A stretch of 64,000 nucleotides of DNA, taken from the NCBI RefSeq assembly GCF_011386835.1, contig NC_088796.1, positions 51,398,001 through 51,462,000 on the forward strand. Direction: 5' to 3'. This DNA comes from Chrysemys picta bellii (taxonomy: Eukaryota). The translations under genes and the position numbers were made by a program. The notes under the pieces are model-generated. The model saw only the letters and a program-made list of their open reading frames with translations. It had not been told where the DNA came from and made no database searches. Shown one piece after another: positions 8,777 through 59,339 of the stretch. Every line of letters begins with the position of its first letter. Positions within the stretch are counted from its first letter, which is position 1.

Positions 8777-9321
8777 TAAATCACATGGTGTTGTTTCTGC
8801 TCCCTGTTTTGGGCACTGAAATTTTTCAAGCAATAGAATAATGAATAATAAATAGAAAATAGCAAACACATGAGTACTCATGTTCATAAACAAATGCCTT
8901 TGTTTGCTTGTGACTGTGGGGATTTGTATGAAGCACAGTCATTTGTGTGAAAAAACACAAATAATAAGAAATCTGAACATGCTCAGACCAAACAGCAACT
9001 GGAATCCAAACAAATGCCCACAATTTTTGGCGTGTTAGACAACTTCTAGTAATTGCTTAATTGCTGGCTCCGTCTTTTAAATTGTCTGAGTCCGAGTTAA
9101 TCCCAGAAAACGTCGAAGTTGGAGGTACAATTTAAAAAAATCATTGGATTATAACAACATTTAACAAACTTTGCTTTTTGAGACAATTTTTGCTCTTAAT
9201 TACCGTGGAGTTGAATGAGACCAGAATAACTTCACTGACTTCAGATTGACACCATTGTAATTTACATCAGAATTTCACCCTCTGTAATCAGAGTGTATTA
9301 GAAACATTAACTAATTCCAAT

Positions 9322-9410
9322 ACTCATAATGCCCCTGTGAATTAGGTAAATATTAGTATTCCCATTTAGGCTGCAGAAGGAGTCAGTGACAGAGTGCAAT
9401 TAGGATTATG
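9322..9410 (-). mobile_element. Degenerate MIR-like fragment
   Basis: CATAATGCCCCTGTGAATTAGGTAAATATTAGTATTCCCATTT resembles the antisense MIR 3' core. Confidence 0.35.
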
Positions 9411-10182
9411 TTTGGCAAAAAGAGAAACAATTTTTGTAGAAAAAATATCTGAAGGAGTGAGGGAATAGTTTTATTGAAAACCAGATATATGGATGAGCCT
9501 GATATTCTTCAGAGGTCTTTAGCTCTGCTTTCTGAACAGTTGGACCACAGTGATTGAATTTCTGGATTAAAAGACCTGATTATTTGGATTCTTTCAATCC
9601 TTTGTATTTTTTAAAGTGTTTTATGGTCTTGGTTCTTATCCTGTTTATTACAGTGTAAATTAGAAATAATGGCATTGAAGTCAATAGCATCACCCAGATG
9701 TAAAATGGATATGAGACCAAATGAGGCCCTATGTTTTTCTTTGGTGGGTAGGAATATTAAAGGCGGTTTCTTGAATAACATATCTAAACATTTTCTTTTG
9801 TAGTTGACTTTCTTGCAAAAGCAATAAAAAGAAATTAATAAAAGAAGATGACAATCTTTTCTTCAGTGGAGTGTTATTTTGCTGATGTAGTAAACCTAGC
9901 TGACATCCAGAATAGCTTATGTCTGCCAACTACAGGCTGATGTTGGCTGGCTGCTCTTTTCCCTCAGCTCTCACTGTAATGGAGAGAGTCTTAAGTCCTG
10001 TTCTGTCCTTTATGATCATGCATGAGGATGAATCTAAGAGGAAGGGGATGAAATTCAGAATGTGAAAGTGTAGGGTGAATAGCAGGAAAAAATCCTGCCC
10101 AGCAGGGGACTATTAGACTGTGGGCTGGACTCACAAGAAAAATGATGAACGCTCCATCACATGGGAAATTTGAAACTAGACT

Positions 10183-12555
10183 TGACACAATACCAGAGTG
10201 ACTGAAAGTTCCCCTGTATTTACACTGTACACATTATTGTAATAATCTTTCTGTAAAATATGCCATGTAGGGTATCATTTAAAAATGAATAACGAACTGA
10301 TTGTCAATATTCTTACTGTATGTATGAAACATATATTAAGAGTTATGAACATAACCTGAAATTATGACTACAGTGTGTTTACCAGACAAGTCTGGGGAGG
10401 GGATTAACCGGTTTCTCAAAGACAAAGGACAAGCTGATGTCTCCAGCCAGGTGTCATCAAAGTTGATTGGCAGTCACCTGTCAAGTGGCCATTCTTTGGC
10501 AATGAAGGGGGGCAGGCACAGATTGATCTACATTTTAGCAAACAACAACATGGAACCTCTTTCACCTTTAGACTCCATGTCTCCATCCTCTCAGCTGGAG
10601 TGAACGATATCTGCAGGTAACCCTCAGGAAAATGCATTTCAAAGGATGACTGGACTATAAAAATGAGGGGCAAATATACCTCACGATATCTTCCTTGCTC
10701 TCTTTTACTTAAGGTGACAAAGGAACCAGCCCTTTGACTTCGAGGGAAGATCCTGACCTGAAAATTTGATCAGCCATGTTGCAGGGAACCCGGGGTAAGG
10801 ATTTTACTTTGAACCAAGTCTAGCTTGTTAAGTTTTAGCTATTAGAAAGCATTTTATCTTTATTTCTTTTGTAACCATTTCTGACTTTAATACCTTGTAG
10901 TTTGTTCACTTAAAATCTCTCTTTGTAGTTAAATAAACTTGTTTTATTTTTAATCTAAACTAATCCAATGTTGTGTCTAAACAGAACTGTTTGGTAACTC
11001 CAGTTAGAGTAGCAAACTATTGAATATTGACCCTTTACAGGGGCAATGGATCTTAAATATTTGACTCATCAAGAAAGGGTTGGACAGTGCAGAACACATG
11101 TTTTGGAGAAAACTGGGAACTGGGAGTGTGCTGTGGTCACCCTGCAAATAGTAACCAAGGCTACTGGAAGCCAGAGTGTGACTGGAGTGGTGCTGACTGG
11201 GGTCAGAGACCAGGACTACAGCTATACACAGTGTGACAATGTATCCCATAATGCTTTATGGGAATATGACATAACTGGAGTATGTTTTATGCTACATGTG
11301 CCATGTAACTTATCTCTGTAAGGATTATGGTCTACTGAATCTATTCATCCTATTTGTACACATATATCATTTTTGTACTTGAAGTTATGAATATTGGCTG
11401 TATACTTGCTTAATTGCTAAGTAAACTTTGTAAGGCATTTGGTCAGCTTCTTTAGAAAGGAATTTGCAAAGTTAAGTGCCCAATCAAGAAGCACTTAAAG
11501 AACAGTGGATCTTGGAATGCTCCAATCCACATAAGAAGTCTACTTGAGGACGTTCAAGGTAGCATGTGAACCATGGCTGCTACCTGTAGTTCTGAGTCAT
11601 GCATGGACATGTGACTTGCCCAGGTGACTCCAAAATTCCATCTTGGAGCTAGACTTTGCATAGGAGTGAGGAGGTCTCCACCCACAAGAGAAAGTCTATT
11701 TAAACCCCTGGGAGACCCCTCCATTTTGTCTTCAGCTGGCTAAAGAGAGAGAGCCTCTCCACCCCCAAGGATACCTGAAAGGAACTGGAACAAAGGACAG
11801 TAACTACAGGGGGTGTGAGTAATTGCTGGACCCAGGAGACTAGTCTGTAAAAGGAAGCTTACTGGGTGAGGTTTTTATCTGTATTCAGTTTCTTAGACAT
11901 AGACTTGCATGTTCTATTTTATTTTGCTTGGTAATTCACTTTGTTCTGTCTGTTACTACCTGGACCCACTTAAATCCTACTTTCTGTATTTAATAAAATC
12001 ACTTTTTACTTATTAATTAACCCAGAGTATGTTTTAATACCGGGGGGCAAACAGCCGTGCATATCTCTCTATCAGTGTTATAGAGGGCGAACAATTTATG
12101 AGTTTACCCTGTATAAGCTTTATAAAGGGGAAAACTGATTTATTTGGGTTTTAGACCCCCTTGGGAGCTGGGCATCTGAGTGTTAAAGACAAGAACACTT
12201 CTGTAAGCTGCTTTCAGTTAAGTCTGTGGCTTTGGGGCAAGTAATTCAGACCCTGGGTCTGTGTTGGAGCAGACAGGCGTGTCTGGCTCAGCAAGACAGG
12301 GTGCTGGGATCCTGAGCTGGCAGGGAAAGCAGGGGCAGAAGCAGTCTTGGCACATCAGTTGACAGTTCCCAAGGGGGAACTGTGATCCAACCCATCACAC
12401 ACAGACACTCAGGGTGTGACTTGCATGCTGGCAGGCTATCGGTGAGTGGTCCGGGTTGTGAGCTACAACAGCAAAGCATTGTGAGGCCCCCAAGCTTGTG
12501 GGGCAGGTGGTCACACAACCCCTCACTGGTCTTGATTGCACCCCAAAATGTGAGA
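10183..12555 (+). mobile_element. Solo LTR (outer), interrupted by a second LTR
   Basis: TATAAAA at about 10657 and AATAAA at about 10932. The LTR-like 3' end (...GATTGCACCCCAAAATGTGAGA) resumes after the insertion. Ends are approximate and no TSD was seen. Confidence 0.65.
11232..12399 (+). mobile_element. Solo LTR (inner), 1168 bp
   Basis: TGTGA...TCACA termini, perfect 5-bp TSD CACAG (11227-11231 and 12400-12404), TATTTAAA at 11697, AATAAA at 11992. Confidence 0.9.
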
Positions 12556-12683
12556 TGGGAGATGGACTAGGGGTCAAATGAGGGCCAGTGCAAGGCCTAT
12601 GCTTCACTTAAACCCTCAAAATAGGGCATTGTGCCAGAGAGGCTCGGCAGTCTTTCTGAGTTATTGATAGCCACTGCCAATAT

Positions 12684-12994
12684 GGCATGTCTAGACTGCA
12701 ATCCAGGCATGTGATTGCAGTTTGAGTAGACATACCCGAGCTAGCTTTAACCTGTCTAGCTCGGGACCCTGAGCAGTGAAGCTGTGGCAGTGAGTGCTTT
12801 AGCGCAGGCTGTACAAGCCTGCCCAGAACCTTAGGTAACTCCTTGTGGAGCTAGCCTGTGCTGAAGGATGCACTGCTATAGCTTCACTACTCTGGGACCT
12901 GGCTAGCCACATTAAAGCTCGCTCAGGTAAATCTACTCAAGCTGCAGTTGCACTCTGTGATTGCAATCTAGTCACACAGCAATCTAGACATGCC
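12684..12994. mobile_element. Quasi-palindromic Harbinger-type MITE
   Basis: TIRs GGCATGTCTAGA / TCTAGACATGCC. Internal inverted pairs GAGTAGA...GCTAGCTTTAA / TTAAAGCTCGC...TCTACTC and AGTGAAGC / GCTTCACT. Confidence 0.7.
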
Positions 12995-13661
12995 AACTGA
13001 TGGCTTTGAAGCTTAAAGACCAAGGCTTTGAATTGGCAACAGAAGCAAACTAGGAGCAAACCTTGTTTTTCTGCTGGACCAGGCACACATTTACTTAACC
13101 AAGTAGATGAAGTCCGGGTTTTATTTCTCTCTTGAAAAATGAAGGTTATTAAAAAGGTGTGATCTAGGAGCTGGTCTCACTGCAAGGAGCAAGAGATGTA
13201 TGGACATTGCTAAGTTCAGGCTGCAGAAGTAATAGGCAATTTTTTGTATGTCAGAGATTGATTTGGCTGTTTAAGCTGAATCTAAAGTAAAACTTAATCA
13301 TGGCTACCCCTAGGTTTCTTCAAAGCTTTAGGATTTACTCTAGTTGTGAAGTCTGTCTCGAAACATTTTCACAGGGTTGAATACTGTGGAAATTTATTGT
13401 AATCTGAAAAGGAAAAAAAGACTCACATGAATTTTCTTCCAAGTCCTTTTCCAGATTTATTTTCTGCTCCGGTTTTCATGGGAAAATCCCTCTCTGTGGT
13501 TATACATCTATTTTAGTGCTGAAATAATGCTTTTCTTGTCAGCATTTTGTTTTCGTAGCTGCACTGAATCTATAACCGAGAAATTATTATGTATTTGTTG
13601 AGGGAAAATAAATGTTGTTGGAAATTTCAATGATGTAAAATTTTGTGACACTGCAAGTTAG

Positions 13662-14110
13662 GGGCTCAGATTGCCCCATCTCCACTATTGAGGGTGGGGA
13701 CTGTCAGGGATATGGTTATGACTCCTGATCCTGGGGCTGGCTTTATGCCAGACACAGCTTTGATCTTAAGGGGGCTGCTTTTAACTGTGCTGTCAGGTCC
13801 CTAGGAGACATCTGCCAGCTGGGGTTGGCCAGAGCCACAGAAAGGTCATGGAACAAGGGCCAGAACTTGGCCCAGAGTTTCCAAATAATTAGCAGAAAGT
13901 CTGCTTATAAATGGGGTTGCAGTAATCCAAGCCACCTATACTCCCATTTCCACTGGCAGGCTTGTACCAAGCTAATGCAGCCCCAAAAGTGAATGGAACT
14001 AGCTGCTTTGGGGGTGTGGCCAGGGCACAGGGGAATCCCCAATGGCACAACGGTCCTCCCTGGCTGAGAGAGCTTCAAACAAGCAGCCCCCAGCAGGGAT
14101 GAATCAAGCT
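13662..14110. repeat. Old GC-richer MITE-like element(s)
   Basis: Termini GGGCTCAGATT / AATCAAGCTC and similarity in style to 43718-44128. May be two adjacent elements. Confidence 0.3.
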
Positions 14111-14669
14111 CTTCATCTACAAGTTAGAGAAATGGCAGTTCAGACAATTCCCTCAGGCTTGGCTCTGTGAGACAACTGGCACCAGGAGGACTAAGAGAGG
14201 CAACCAAAGCAGCATTTGATTTTAATGAAAACAGAGAGGGTGTGGGAGAAAGTGTATTTATAAATATGTAAATGGATAAATCTTTTCCAAAATGACTTTA
14301 CCTCCCAAACAAATTATCTTTAAATGGAACTCTTTCTGTTTAATGTCTTTTTTATCCCCAATGTGAAACAGTTATGATCAGTTTTCCATTTTCACTTTGA
14401 GAAAAAAGGTCAGAATTAATTGATCTGTAATTGTATTGATGGCAAATGTTCTACAGGAATTGTAATTGAACCAAACCACCAACATGGGAAATATTAGGAC
14501 TCAAATCAGGTACTAGATAGAGCCCCTGAATTTCCATAAATCAGCTCAGCAGAAAAACTCATACAGACATTGAGAAAGAAAAGAAAATAAATTAAGTTTT
14601 CTATCGAATCCAAAATAATTGTTGGAGTGGAGGCACGCAAGCCTCGGTATTCAATAGAGATGGCTATAT

Positions 14670-15136
14670 TAAAACACATATTGGCTTGCCCAGTGATCCA
14701 GATTATTCTGTATCAGTGACCTGTCCTCTTCATTATTTGCCACTTTCCCAATCTTTGTGTCATCTGCAACCTTTATCAGTAATGATTTTATGTTTTCTTC
14801 CAGGTCATTGATAACAATGTTAAATCTGTGGCTAAAAGTGTAGGGCCAAGAACTGAACCCCGCTAGAAACACATCTGATGATGATTCCCCATTTCCATTT
14901 TCAGACTGATCATTTAGTCAGTTTTTAATCCATTTAATGTGTTACATGTTAATTTTGTATCATTCAAGTTTTTTAATTAAAATGTTACACCATACGAAGT
15001 CAAATGTTTACAGAAGTCTAAATATATTAATCAACCCTATTACCCTTACCAATGAAACTTGTAATCTGATTTGACAGGATCTATTTTCCATATTGATTGG
15101 CATTAACCCATATTGATTGGCATTAATTATATTACC
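14670..15136 (-). mobile_element. CR1 LINE ORF2 RT fragment
   Basis: The minus strand encodes MENRSCQ... and FNIVINDLEENIKSLLIKVADDTKIGKVANNEEDRSLIQ (CR1 RT domains, FADD motif mutated to VADD). Confidence 0.9.
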
Positions 15137-52593: not shown

Positions 52594-52811
52594 GCCCTGG
52601 TCTACACTACAAAGTTAGTCAGGGGTATAGAAAACCACACCTGAATGATGCAGTTATAATGACTGAACTCCTGGTGTAGACAGCACTATGTTGATGGGAG
52701 AGGGAGGTGGAGTACCTATGCTGACAGGAGAATCTTTCCCATCAGCCTAGGTAGCATCTTCAATAAGTGTGACAGCATCGCAGCTGCACCGCTGGAAGTG
52801 TAGACAAGCCC
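52594..52811. mobile_element. PIF/Harbinger-type MITE
   Basis: GCCCTGGTCTACAC / GTGTAGACAAGCCC termini with TTA on the right flank. Confidence 0.7.
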
Positions 52812-53098
52812 TTAGTCTGTTATAACTTTTAGCAATGAAATTCACAAGTTAATAAGAAATACTTTTTAAACTATGCATTATCAGTTAATAACTGAATGCT
52901 TTTCAGATGCATTGGCTAGCCTCTTATTCTGGTATGATAATCTTTATTCTAGAAATCTTAAGTCTGTTGTTACAATTTAAGCACCTAAAAACCTGTCTTT
53001 GGTAAACAATTACTTGTTTTGGGGGCATTTATATTCACATTTAGGTGCTCCAATGTGAAGCTAGGTGACCAGTTTTAGGCACCCAAGTTTGAAATGTG

Positions 53099-53497
53099 TA
53101 TCCCTGCACCTCATAGGGTATGTCTACAATGCTAAACAAACATCCCCCTCTCTCCCACAAAAATCCCAACAAACAAAAAACAATGAACCCATGGCAGCAA
53201 ATCTCAGAGTTTGGTTCAACTGACTTGGTCTCATGCTACAGGGCTAAAAATAGCAGTGTAGATATTCCCGCTTGGGCTGGAGCCTGTGAGGGGGCAGAGT
53301 TTCAGAGCCCAGGCTCCAGCCCAAGTGGGAACATCTACACTGCTATTTTTAGCCCTGTAGCATGAGACCAAGTCAGTTGAACCAAACTCTGAGATTTGCT
53401 GCCATGGGTTCATTGTTTTTTGTTTGTTGGGATTTTTGTGGGAGAGAGGGGGATGTTTGTTTAGCATTGTAGACATACCCTATGAGGTGCAGGGATA
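53099..53497. repeat. Long inverted repeat: 165-bp perfect arms, 188-bp stem in total, 23-nt loop
   Basis: 53099-53263 is the exact reverse complement of 53333-53497 (checked base by base). The stem continues to 53286/53310 with two mismatches. It explains the twin 81-aa ORFs on opposite strands. Confidence 0.98.
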
Positions 53498-53608
53498 TCT
53501 ATACTGATATTTTTAGCCCTGCAGCTCAAGCCCAAGTCAGTTGACTCCGGGTCTGAGACTTGCTGCCGCAGGGTTTTTCTTTTTTTTATTTGCAGTGTAG
53601 ACATACCC
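53116..53608. mobile_element. PIF/Harbinger-type quasi-palindromic MITE containing the inverted duplication
   Basis: TIRs GGGTATGTCTACA / TGTAGACATACCC, flanks ATA/TTA. The original diverged right arm is retained at 53497-53608. Confidence 0.85.
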
Positions 53609-55195
53609 TTAGAATGCTCCCTGCACCTAGCAGTCCAGAATCACCACCCTGCTTGGCCCTGCACTGCACAATACTGACGCCAATGTTACATATTTATTAA
53701 AATTTGAACATCGGTGAGTCACAAAAATAAATACTTAGACTTTGTTAAACAGTCATTAAAAGTTAATCAGTATGAACATTAATATTTTTCTTGAGTTACT
53801 CAATATTTAGACTTGAATTCATGACAATGTCAATTAAATATAAAGACTATGCTTAGTTTTCACATTACTGAAATAGTTCTAGCTCCTGGCAGAGAGCTGG
53901 TAAGGGCATAAGACCTTGATATGGCTAAACCGAGACCCAGGCAAAAGAAGGGGGTGATTTATTGGCTTTGGTCCCAATCCTTCCCCAATTGATGTCAATG
54001 GCAAATCTCCTACTAACTTCAATGGAAGTTCAGACTTACATTTAAGTTGAAGAAGGCTGGCTCCATGAAGACAGAGCCCAATGAAGCCAGGACTGGGTTT
54101 TAATGGCTATCAGTGAGTTAAACTGCCACAGTGATAGCACTCTTTTATGCAGCAAATAACACATCTTGCCAGATTCTGAATAAGAGGCTGTGGTAGGTAA
54201 CCACATAGGAATTCCATCCTGACTATGTAAATGGAATTGAGGATGAAAGAAAAGAGAAAAGAAAAGAGCTAATTACAAGACAACTCATATTTTCATTTGG
54301 TTTCAGTTTAGCAAGACGAACTTACTTCTGATGTGACCTTTACAGTGGTGAAATTCTGCTTCCTACATGTCTTTCCATGTCATACTGTCCATCTGTCCTG
54401 TATTAGCAAGAACACCATATAGTCCCAGTAGCTTGCTCAGGAAAGGTTTCAACATAGAGTGGAGATTTCAACAACAGATATATATACACACATACATATA
54501 TAAATCCTTCTCCCTGCATAAACCATCTGCCAATTCTTATAAGTATCATATTTCTAGCTTTGCTTTATGAATGGAAATAAGAGAATTTGATTTAAATTGG
54601 GACATGACCTACTCTAATAAAGTATCCCCTTACTATCAGAAACTAGATAGTTCCTGCTTCAAATTGGGGTTGTGAAGATTATTTAATTGAAGTTTGCAAA
54701 GCACTTCAAGACCCTTGGAGGAAAGAGTGTTAGAAATATAGAAAAGCAAAGTACTTACTGTGAGCTTATGCCACTGTCTGTGAAATAACCAAGGTGATAC
54801 AGAAGTGTAACATGACTAAATAAGGGTGTGTTCATTTAATAGAGTGATATGTATCAGCACTATCTTTAATGACTCCATTTGCTCTGAGTGTCAATCTTTG
54901 GAATAGAATGGTGGTCTAGAATATCCATAAGTGAAAACTAAATCATCAAAACATACAGTGGAGCATTTAAGAAACTGCAGGAGGTGAGACGTTTCTCTCA
55001 AAAGTAGATAATTTTGGCTAAGATATTGTTATGTACTGGTGTGGCAGCATGAGATATACAAATGCTGCTTGAAATAAAAAGAGACAGACATTACTAAAAC
55101 AGGCAAAAAGAGACTGAAGAATCAGGATATGATTATATCTATATGGATTGGAACTAATTGACAACTGAAACCACTTTCTGAAATCCAAACCGGCC

Positions 55196-58200: not shown

Positions 58201-59339
58201 GTAGATTGTAGAGTTCAGTTCTGAAATAGATCATAGGAAATTACTGTCTATTATTCTGGAGCTAATTTACTCAAGTTCTTATAGATCATAACTTGAGACT
58301 TTGTAGTGCATAAGTCACTTTTGAAAATGGGATTTAGATTCCTAAGTCATTTCCTTACAGAAAGAAACTCTTATTTCCATTTATAATGCTCCAGTGGATA
58401 AAACTCGAGCCTAGGATGCCTCAGGGCTTGAAGGGCAAAGATTTCATTCTGGGCCCCACTGAGAACCTTACACAGAGGTTGTCTACTTGGGGTTTGCACA
58501 GGGGTGATGTGTTACTAGTTGGGTCTATGTGTAATGCTTTATGTACAGTAGCATGTGTGTGTTGCAATGACAATTCACTGACTTCCATGCTACTCGAGTA
58601 GAGGCTCCTGGGCAGCTCATTAGTTGTTGACCATCCCCCACCCCTTTGTGCTAGCTTAGTCACCGCTGGCACAGAGGGCACCTGACCAGCAGGCAACATG
58701 TGCAGTGGCTGCCTTGCACAGGGACACTGCAAGAAAAGAGTGGGGTAGAGGCGCTTGTATGGGCACTCTACAAAGTGAATAAACCACAGGCCATGTTTAA
58801 TATAGGTATTATACTTGAGCTTCACTTTTGAGTACAGTATTGAGTACTGTCAGGAAGGTTTGAGATCAAATCAGGCATTGTGAAAAAGGTGATGCTGTAC
58901 TAAATGTAAATTAGATGTGAAATTTGCCTAAATGAGTTAGGAACCTGAGTCCCATTTTCAAAAGTGATTTTGAACACTATGGGGGTACAGCTATGAAAGT
59001 TTTTTTTAGCAAATAGTAAATTTGCTGAAAATGAATTTTTGGGGGTTCCGAAACTAGTCACCAATTTGGATTAAATTTGGTGAATAATTTCAGCCAACAT
59101 CCCTCCCCCCCCCCGAAATGTCAAAATGGTTTTGGTTCAAAACTCCCCTCCCCCCCCCCCAAGTCAGTTATTTGCTTAGCTCTACTCAGCAGCTCCCTAC
59201 GCATAGGCTTCTAAATCAATAAGATGCTTTTGAAAGTTTTGCCCTAGGCATCTAAAGCAGAACAGATACTTTGCCTTTCAAAAGCCTTTCAAATATCTGA
59301 ACTCCTGAATGTAATGTAGTAGAGTCTATTGGATCAAAT

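What the first reader, a model, noticed from the sequence alone, without database searches (positions are those of the whole stretch)
53099..53608. Perfect 165-bp fold-back inverted duplication inside an old MITE: an apparent snapshot of palindrome regeneration
Seen: 53099-53263 and 53333-53497 are exact reverse complements, including 17 bp of non-MITE flank (53099-53115) and low-complexity A/C runs. Directly after, at 53497, the MITE's original right arm resumes (ATCTATACTGATATTTTTAGCCCTGCAGCTCAAGCCCAAGTCAG...). That arm differs at many positions from the new arm (ATCTACACTGCTATTTTTAGCCCTGTAGCATGAGACCAAGTCAG...). The inserted 164 bp sits exactly at the symmetric position, and the junction contexts are similar (GGGAAC|ATCTA vs GGGAT|ATCTA). 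Established: quasi-palindromes drive intra-strand template switching during replication. Inference: the nascent strand folded back on the MITE hairpin, copied the left arm past the TIR, then re-primed on the original template. Zero mismatches against a heavily diverged host imply a very recent event. The result is a MITE with two right TIRs (ending 53480 and 53608), a possible route by which these palindromic MITEs renew their symmetry or spawn perfect-hairpin derivatives, and a cruciform-prone fragile site.
Basis: partly seen in the sequence, partly recalled or inferred. Interest (0 to 1): 0.8.

Follow-up and report, generated by a model that had tools for sequence, protein, structure and literature searches.

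The report
Fold-back inverted duplication inside old MITE
A 164-base piece of an old transposon relic was copied backwards onto itself, making a perfect 188-bp hairpin-forming palindrome; the change is real and found only in this species, but it is an ordinary, unusually long case of a known copying error.

Summary
53099-53263 and 53333-53497 are exact reverse complements (165 nt). They lie outside an older 23-bp inner stem with two mismatches and a 23-nt loop centred on 53298. The diverged old right arm (53497-53609) follows directly.

It is not an assembly artefact. Words that exist only across junction 2 occur in seven runs from six samples in three studies, under two organism labels. One laid run gives a mismatch-free contig across that junction, and its arm contig has about twice the depth of the flanks.

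Contigs of three related species (0.6-1.7% diverged) run unbroken from the left flank through the left arm, so those species have no inverted copy. The insertion is therefore derived and specific to this lineage.

The best reading is self-templated fold-back synthesis primed on the element's central hairpin, with a 5-nt ATCTA overlap at the first switch and 1 nt at the return. This matches template-switch type 3-2-1-4. A fold-back repair of a double-strand break gives the same product and cannot be excluded.

Zero mismatches in 165 bp is expected (P about 0.4) for any date since the split from the nearest species. There is no sign that the perfect-hairpin derivative has spread, and the junction similarity is within chance. 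This is a new member of a known kind, of modest interest.

The parts
53099..53115 (+). 17 nt of host flank to the left of the element. It was copied as part of the template, and its reverse complement is 53481-53497.
   Evidence: Contigs of species B, C and F run through it from the unique left flank.
53116..53263 (+). Left arm of the old element, which served as template for the copy. It includes an arm-specific A/C-rich low-complexity stretch at about 53130-53185.
   Evidence: Perfect complement of 53333-53480. It is present, with 0-2 differences inside the arm (2-16 over the whole contig), in contigs of B, C and F that end at 53259-53269.
53264..53332 (.). Old centre of the element. The inner stems are 53264-53286 and 53310-53332 (23 pairs, 2 mismatches) and the loop is 53287-53309. 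This is the hairpin that primed the fold-back.
   Evidence: for the mismatch positions; with the ATCTA 3' end it folds at -31.1 kcal/mol, z = -9.8. It is the most repeated part of the family (table 2).
53333..53496 (+). The inserted 164 nt, an exact reverse complement of 53100-53263. The boundaries can slide right by up to 5 nt because ATCTA begins both the insert and the old arm. A at 53497 can belong to either side.
   Evidence: In run X17 the arm contig 53337-53497 has 0 differences and depth 31 against 15-21 in the flanks.
53497..53609 (+). Retained, diverged original right arm, ending in the original right terminal repeat at 53596-53609.
   Evidence: 76% identical to the new arm at an offset of 164. 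In species F, similarity to the window on this side begins exactly at 53497, after 15 contig letters that do not fit the window (record 7).
53468..53527 (+). Junction 2 (53497|53498), diagnostic of the derived allele.
   Evidence: Both of its sampled 31-mers are held by 7 runs, 6 samples and 3 studies under organisms A and G. X17 contig 53468-53612 spans it with 0 differences.
53468..53481 (+). New, second right terminal repeat created by the copy.
   Evidence: Perfect 14-mer.

Best explanation
This is a real germline insertion of 164 bp, specific to one lineage, made by self-templated (fold-back) DNA synthesis. A growing top strand had reached the end of the element's centre (...GGGAAC-ATCTA). 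It came off its template and its palindromic centre snapped into a hairpin: a 34-bp stem with two internal mismatches, the last 5 nt ATCTA perfectly paired. The polymerase then copied the strand's own left arm backwards, through the left terminal repeat and 17 nt into host DNA. The end then returned to the original template at the point of departure, with only 1 nt of strict microhomology, and went on through the old right arm. I take the setting to be a replication fork, which is template-switch type 3-2-1-4 of the four-point model. Shown: the structure, its reality in independent reads, its absence from three related species, and the hairpin's stability. Inferred: the order of steps, the exact ancestral junction, and the replicative setting.
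For: The copied segment is an exact reverse complement and stops at an old mismatch on its inner side. If the two mismatches were scattered at random over the 188 pairs, the chance that both fall in the inner 23 would be about 1.5% (own arithmetic). The centre hairpin with its ATCTA end is very stable. The first switch shows a 5-nt overlap and no ancestral base is lost. The C.A mismatch 6 nt from the inferred primer end was kept, which fits a primer end already extended into ATCTA. Junction 2 is present in independent read sets. In X17 the left-flank contig stops at 53128, exactly 30 nt into the arm, as a k=31 graph must at a repeat. In B, C and F the contigs run on to 53259-53269. Type 3-2-1-4 is an established class that creates inverted repeats and made up 31% of high-confidence human-chimp events (PMC5453318).
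Against: The ancestral junction was never read directly, because contigs of B and C start at 53503 and only 15 unseen letters precede 53497 in F. No listed contig spans junction 1. 164 nt is long for catalogued short template switches; the largest pattern in one survey was 59 bp (PMC8794818). The 1-nt return microhomology and the unremarkable junction similarity fit end joining just as well. Nothing in a single product tells a fork from a repair event.
Confidence: 0.5

Rival explanations
1. The same fold-back self-priming, but at a double-strand break. A break falls at the centre/old-arm boundary and resection exposes the top-strand 3' tail. The tail folds on the central palindrome and is extended for about 160 nt. 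The new DNA is then unwound and captured by the other break end through end joining (synthesis-dependent MMEJ, or the Pol-delta plus NHEJ hybrid). The break might even come from a transposase cut near the inner terminal-repeat-like motif.
For: In yeast, fold-back inverted insertions at breaks range from 2 to about 150 bp. They are primed by imperfect inverted microhomology with a 41-nt loop, and the second junction has 0-5 bp microhomology with a median of 2 (PMC11724301). Here the priming stem is 34 bp with a 23-nt loop, and the second junction has 1 nt. The junction similarity that would favour a homology-guided return is within chance. Each arm is bounded by terminal-repeat-like motifs, one of them 6 nt from junction 1.
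Against: Neither side of the site has lost a base. ATCTA is present on both sides of the insert. With a blunt break this needs extension from a terminal C.A mismatch, or a staggered break. There is no independent sign of a break or of transposase activity at this site.
Confidence: 0.35
2. The direction of change is reversed. The long palindrome is ancestral, and species B, C and F lost the new arm by deletion between the two ATCTA direct repeats.
For: Long perfect palindromes are unstable, and the 164 nt are flanked by 5-nt direct repeats, which would allow a precise deletion.
Against: F is the most distant species (24 differences in about 1450 nt, against 8-9 for B and C). B and C share changes that F lacks (table 3). 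Absence in both would therefore need at least two identical deletions. Perfect arms beside a 24%-diverged old arm also point to a young copy.
Confidence: 0.04
3. Assembly, polishing or library artefact, such as a chimeric fold-back read.
For: Perfect palindromes are a known product of chimeric reads. Two runs of one sample (X1, X5) hold neither of the two sampled junction words, while another run of that same sample (X4) holds both.
Against: The junction-2 words occur in 7 runs of 6 samples in 3 studies, four of the samples not flagged as a possible source. In X17 the junction contig has full single-copy depth (20) and the arm contig double depth (31). The duplication returns to the original orientation after 164 nt, which chimeric reads do not do.
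Confidence: 0.02
4. Transposition or nested insertion: a second, young copy of the element, or of one arm unit, inserted next to an old one.
For: Each arm is bounded by the family's roughly 18-nt terminal motif, so an arm looks like a mobile unit. The family is highly repeated.
Against: The copy carries 17 nt of host flank beyond the terminal repeat and ends 6 nt short of the inner motif. It has no target-site duplication. It is identical to the neighbouring arm, including that arm's private low-complexity stretch, whose words occur only at about 2x single-copy depth.
Confidence: 0.02

Closest known systems
Template-switch mutation, event type 3-2-1-4 of the four-point model (Loytynoja and Goldman 2017, PMC5453318). 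This generalises Ripley's quasi-palindrome model.
   Same: [quoted passage not shown] It is inserted where replication left the template, creating or extending a perfect inverted repeat. A pre-existing imperfect inverted repeat seeds the event.
   Different: The copied fragment is 164 nt, against tens of nt in the published catalogues (the largest pattern in PMC8794818 was 59 bp). The seed is the central hairpin of a transposon relic. The copy runs out of the element into host DNA. The event is a pure insertion that leaves the old arm in place rather than correcting it.
Fold-back (snap-back) templated inverted insertions at double-strand breaks: SD-MMEJ (PMC5728401, PMC2943611) and the Pol-delta plus NHEJ hybrid (PMC11724301).
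   Same: Priming occurs on an imperfect hairpin with a loop of tens of nt. Synthesis runs up to about 150 nt. The new strand is unwound and joined with 0-5 nt of microhomology, which lengthens an inverted repeat.
   Different: Those events were scored at induced breaks in yeast or flies and are mostly under 34 nt. Here there is a natural, apparently fixed germline allele with no evidence of a break.
Inverted-repeat expansion by template switching in yeast promoters (PMC13100816).
   Same: Lineage-specific lengthening of an existing inverted repeat, inferred by comparing related genomes.
   Different: Much shorter repeats, in regulatory DNA with tested expression effects. No function is known here.
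Large fold-back inversions or inverted duplications (PMC3907307, PMC7467729).
   Same: A hairpin of single-stranded DNA at short inverted repeats primes an inverted copy.
   Different: Those run on for kilobases to megabases, give dicentric or terminal rearrangements, and do not return to the original template.

Membership tests
Template-switch mutation, type 3-2-1-4 | The novel fragment is an exact reverse complement of nearby sequence | tested here: met
   165 of 165 pairs
Template-switch mutation, type 3-2-1-4 | Switch points ordered 3 < 2 < 1 <= 4 on the ancestral sequence, with the source upstream and the return at or after the point of departure | tested here: inconclusive
   The order fits the ancestral sequence inferred from the old arm. 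If the primer included ATCTA, point 4 lies up to 5 nt before point 1. The ancestral junction was not read directly.
Template-switch mutation, type 3-2-1-4 | Related genomes carry the state without the fragment | tested here: met
   Contigs of B, C and F run unbroken through 53099-53259, which a k=31 graph cannot do if an exact inverted copy exists. X17 breaks at 53128.
Template-switch mutation, type 3-2-1-4 | Arises during DNA replication | not testable with these tools
   One product cannot tell a fork from repair synthesis.
Break-induced fold-back inverted insertion (SD-MMEJ or Pol-delta plus NHEJ) | Inverted (micro)homology next to the break primes the synthesis | tested here: met
   34-bp stem with 2 mismatches and a 23-nt loop ending at junction 1
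Break-induced fold-back inverted insertion (SD-MMEJ or Pol-delta plus NHEJ) | Second junction with 0-5 nt of microhomology | tested here: met
   1 nt, the A at 53497. The wider similarity is within chance.
Break-induced fold-back inverted insertion (SD-MMEJ or Pol-delta plus NHEJ) | A double-strand break at the site | not testable with these tools
   No trace is expected in the product.
MITE (possibly PIF/Harbinger-type) | Terminal inverted repeats | tested here: met
   Perfect 14-nt ends. The same roughly 18-nt motif also bounds each arm on its inner side.
MITE (possibly PIF/Harbinger-type) | High copy number, small size, no coding capacity | tested here: met
   Summed word depth of 9,000-15,000 against 15-20 in the flanks in X17, and similar ratios in the three other species. 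The ancestral length is about 330 bp. ORFs elsewhere in the window had no Pfam hits.
MITE (possibly PIF/Harbinger-type) | 3-bp TWA target-site duplication | tested here: inconclusive
   ATA on the left and TTA on the right: one mismatch, in an old element. The superfamily was not established and the family name was not found.
Assembly or library artefact | Junction absent from independent read sets | tested here: not met
   Junction 2 is present in 6 samples from 3 studies and in a mismatch-free X17 contig.
Rfam miRNA families mir-3129 and mir-326 | Score at or above the family's gathering threshold | tested here: not met
   27-32 bits against thresholds of 66-90, on the centre hairpin only.

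The most novel reading that the evidence does not exclude
The central hairpins of these palindromic elements may prime fold-back synthesis repeatedly across this genome. That would produce long perfect palindromes that swallow host flank, and would be a steady source of new perfect-hairpin elements, hairpin-RNA loci and fragile sites. Three unchecked first-reader notes elsewhere in the same genome describe MITEs with inverted copies of host flank or locally templated inverted insertions. The family's own head-to-head two-unit build could have arisen the same way.
Probability: 0.12. Interest if true: 0.55.

Novelty: new member of a known kind. Interest (0 to 1): 0.3.

Why it matters
This is a clean natural example of an unusually long templated inverted insertion, with both junctions readable to the base. 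The seed hairpin, the template and the displaced old arm are all preserved side by side, and related species give the direction of change. It shows that a decayed transposon hairpin can still seed a 188-bp perfect palindrome. It could serve as a marker allele for this lineage and as a test case for template-switch detection tools, which are tuned to much shorter events. It does not reveal a new mechanism, and no function is indicated.

Tried and rejected
- **Other family copies in the window.** I looked for copies to build a consensus. There are none beyond short terminal-motif matches.
- **Junction similarity.** I tested whether GGGAT|ATCTA against GGGAAC|ATCTA shows a homology-guided return. 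It does not: 9% of possible stop points are as good, and 16 earlier ones were passed over.
- **Reading the ancestral junction in other species.** Looking up short ORFs of the locus in the public contig collection found nothing on record. The single read-laying run did not list a contig across the ancestral junction.
- **Rfam.** Only sub-threshold miRNA-like hits on the centre hairpin.
- **Pfam and ORFs.** Seven of the window's ORFs of 110 aa or more had no Pfam hits, and none of the 15 such ORFs lies near the locus.
- **Family name.** Literature searches for a named turtle or crocodilian MITE family with these ends found nothing usable.
- **Whole palindrome made at once.** I considered that 53099-53497 formed in one step and mutated later. 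I rejected this because both mismatches lie in the inner 23 pairs and none in the outer 165.
- **Arm-to-arm gene conversion.** Rejected, because it does not explain the retained old arm or the copied flank.

Full report
**Observation.** Pairing bases outward from position 53298 gives a 23-nt loop and then an inner stem of 23 pairs (offsets 12-34). That stem has two mismatches, 53270/53326 (G.T) and 53264/53332 (A.C). Beyond it lie 165 consecutive perfect pairs, 53099-53263 against 53333-53497, after which complementarity stops abruptly. The repeat finder reports the same thing as arms of 188 nt, 99% complementary, 23 nt apart. No other inverted repeat of this size exists in the 64-kb window. 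The copy includes 17 nt (53099-53115) that lie outside the element's terminal repeat. From 53497 a second right arm follows. It aligns to the new arm at an offset of exactly 164 nt, with 76% ungapped identity, or 83% over non-gap columns, and it lacks the A/C-rich stretch private to the left arm. The terminal 14-mer occurs perfectly three times, once on the left and twice on the right. The only refinement is that the palindrome continues through the old centre.

**Anatomy.**
- The same roughly 18-nt terminal motif (GGGWAYRTCTACAMTGC) occurs at the outer ends of the element and at the inner end of each arm, 16 of 20 identical to the outer one.
- The "old MITE" therefore looks like two units placed head to head around a 57-bp GC-rich hairpin.
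- Summed contig depth shows that the centre and the terminal motif are repeated hundreds of times in all four genomes laid. The left arm's low-complexity stretch is unique to this locus (table 2).
- The flanking trinucleotides are ATA and TTA. This is compatible with a decayed TWA target duplication of the PIF/Harbinger kind but does not prove it. I could not name the family.

**Junctions.** At junction 1, the insert and the old arm both begin with ATCTA. The first switch can therefore lie anywhere in 53333-53337. At junction 2, the copied flank and the old arm share only the A at 53497. I scored every possible stop point of a run-on copy against the departure site. 41 of 454 stop points are at least as similar, and 16 of them come earlier than the real one. 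The resemblance therefore carries no weight.

**Is it real?**
- A 60-nt query in which every 31-mer crosses junction 2 had two sampled words.
- Both words are held by seven runs from six samples in three studies, under the coded organisms A and G, which share a species label. Four of the samples are not flagged as a possible source of the assembly.
- Laying Logan contigs of run X17 (organism G) gave four results. The left-flank contig ends at 53128, exactly 30 nt into the arm, as a k=31 graph must at a repeat boundary. The arm contig 53337-53497 has no differences and depth 31. A contig 53468-53612 crosses junction 2 with no differences at depth 20. The flanks have depth 15-21.
- So the arm is present twice and the junction at single-copy depth. 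An assembly or library artefact is effectively excluded.
- No listed contig spans junction 1, because the centre is too repetitive for short-read contigs.
- Two runs of one sample (X1, X5) hold neither junction word although a third run of that sample (X4) holds both. I leave this unexplained.

**Direction of change and age.**
- In species B, C and F, contigs start in the unique left flank and run on through 53099 to 53259, 53269 and 53259. They show 2, 3 and 16 differences and do not break at 53128 (table 8). That is impossible if an exact inverted copy existed, so these genomes have only one copy of the arm.
- On the right, the contigs of B and C start at 53503. The contig of F fits the window from exactly 53497, and the 15 letters before that do not fit.
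- Flank divergence from the window is 8/1255 for B, 9/1265 for C and 24/1450 for F. B and C share changes that F lacks (table 3), so F is the outgroup. One gain in the window's lineage is more parsimonious than two identical losses.
- About 3-4 changes in roughly 1,450 nt are private to the window's lineage, a branch of 0.2-0.3%. An insertion at the very base of that branch would give 0.6-1.1 expected arm-to-arm differences, so P(0) is 0.34-0.55.
- Perfect arms therefore say only that the event is younger than the split from B and C. It also predates the common ancestor of the six sampled individuals. "Very recent" is not established.

**Mechanism.**
- The centre with an ATCTA 3' end folds into a hairpin of -31 kcal/mol, z = -9.8. 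The last 5 nt are paired and the C.A mismatch lies 6 nt from the end. That is a good self-primer, and it explains why the mismatch survived.
- Extension on the strand's own left arm yields exactly the observed insert.
- The product is type 3-2-1-4 of the four-point template-switch model. This is an established class that creates inverted repeats and accounted for 31% of high-confidence human-chimp events (PMC5453318).
- Expansion of existing inverted repeats by this route has been described in yeast (PMC13100816).
- The same product is expected from fold-back priming at a resected double-strand break, followed by capture of the new strand by end joining. In yeast such insertions reach about 150 bp, use imperfect stems with a 41-nt loop, and have 0-5 nt (median 2) at the second junction (PMC11724301).
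- The single nucleotide of microhomology here fits either route.
- The lack of any loss of ancestral bases, and the duplicated ATCTA, lean slightly towards an intact template. I put the fork model at 0.5 and the break model at 0.35.

- The new palindrome is a very stable hairpin or cruciform candidate, at -257 kcal/mol for the region. Fragility itself is untested.
- It is not a regenerated element. The old arm is retained and host DNA is included.
- The stretch 53116-53481 is formally a perfect-palindrome unit with identical ends. However, its private words occur at only about twice single-copy depth, so it has not spread.
- Only sub-threshold miRNA-like scores fall on the centre. Expression could not be examined.

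**Earlier notes of this scan.** Three unchecked first-reader notes elsewhere in the same genome describe MITEs with inverted copies of host flank or locally templated inverted insertions (s1-320944, s1-321047, s1-321048). A fourth describes a possibly intact Harbinger transposon (s1-312533). They suggest the process may recur, but I could not test them.

**Verdict.** The fold-back copying mechanism is well supported as a class, but whether it happened at a replication fork or at a break is unresolved. The claims of recency and of transposon renewal are unsupported. This is a long, well-preserved new member of a known kind of mutation.

Noticed in passing
window 53101-53111 and 53618-53628: An 11-nt direct repeat, TCCCTGCACCT, lies in both host flanks of the element, 4 nt from the left end and 8 nt from the right end. 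Only 10 of 3000 random 40-nt pairs from the window match this well. It is too far from the ends and too long for an ordinary target-site duplication. Unexplained.
   Followed up: partly
window 52594-52812: A second MITE-like element has a related terminal motif (GGGCTTGTCTACAC..., followed by TTA on the right) and an internal copy of the motif near 52668. It is highly repeated in all four genomes laid, with depth up to about 3,760 against about 20.
   Followed up: partly
window 53968-54039, minus strand: A hairpin with a sub-threshold match to mir-1677 (30.9 bits against a gathering score of 84). It sits in a short repeat with depth 234 against 15 in X17. Probably another repeat-derived hairpin.
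   Followed up: no
window 58312-58352 and 58930-58970: A 41-nt inverted repeat, 88% complementary, with arms 577 nt apart. Possibly the ends of another DNA-transposon relic.
   Followed up: no
runs X1 and X5 against X4 (same sample S1): X4 holds both junction-2 words. X1 and X5, from the same sample, hold neither, although X1 holds 93% of the words of the wider 1.3-kb stretch. This could be library type or poor coverage at the palindrome.
   Followed up: no
window 53040-53100 and 53620-53635: The left flank holds several copies of a TAGGTGC/TAGGCAC-like motif and the right flank holds its complement, GCACCTAG. Depth is mildly raised at 53013-53126. The element may sit inside an older repeat.
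   Followed up: no
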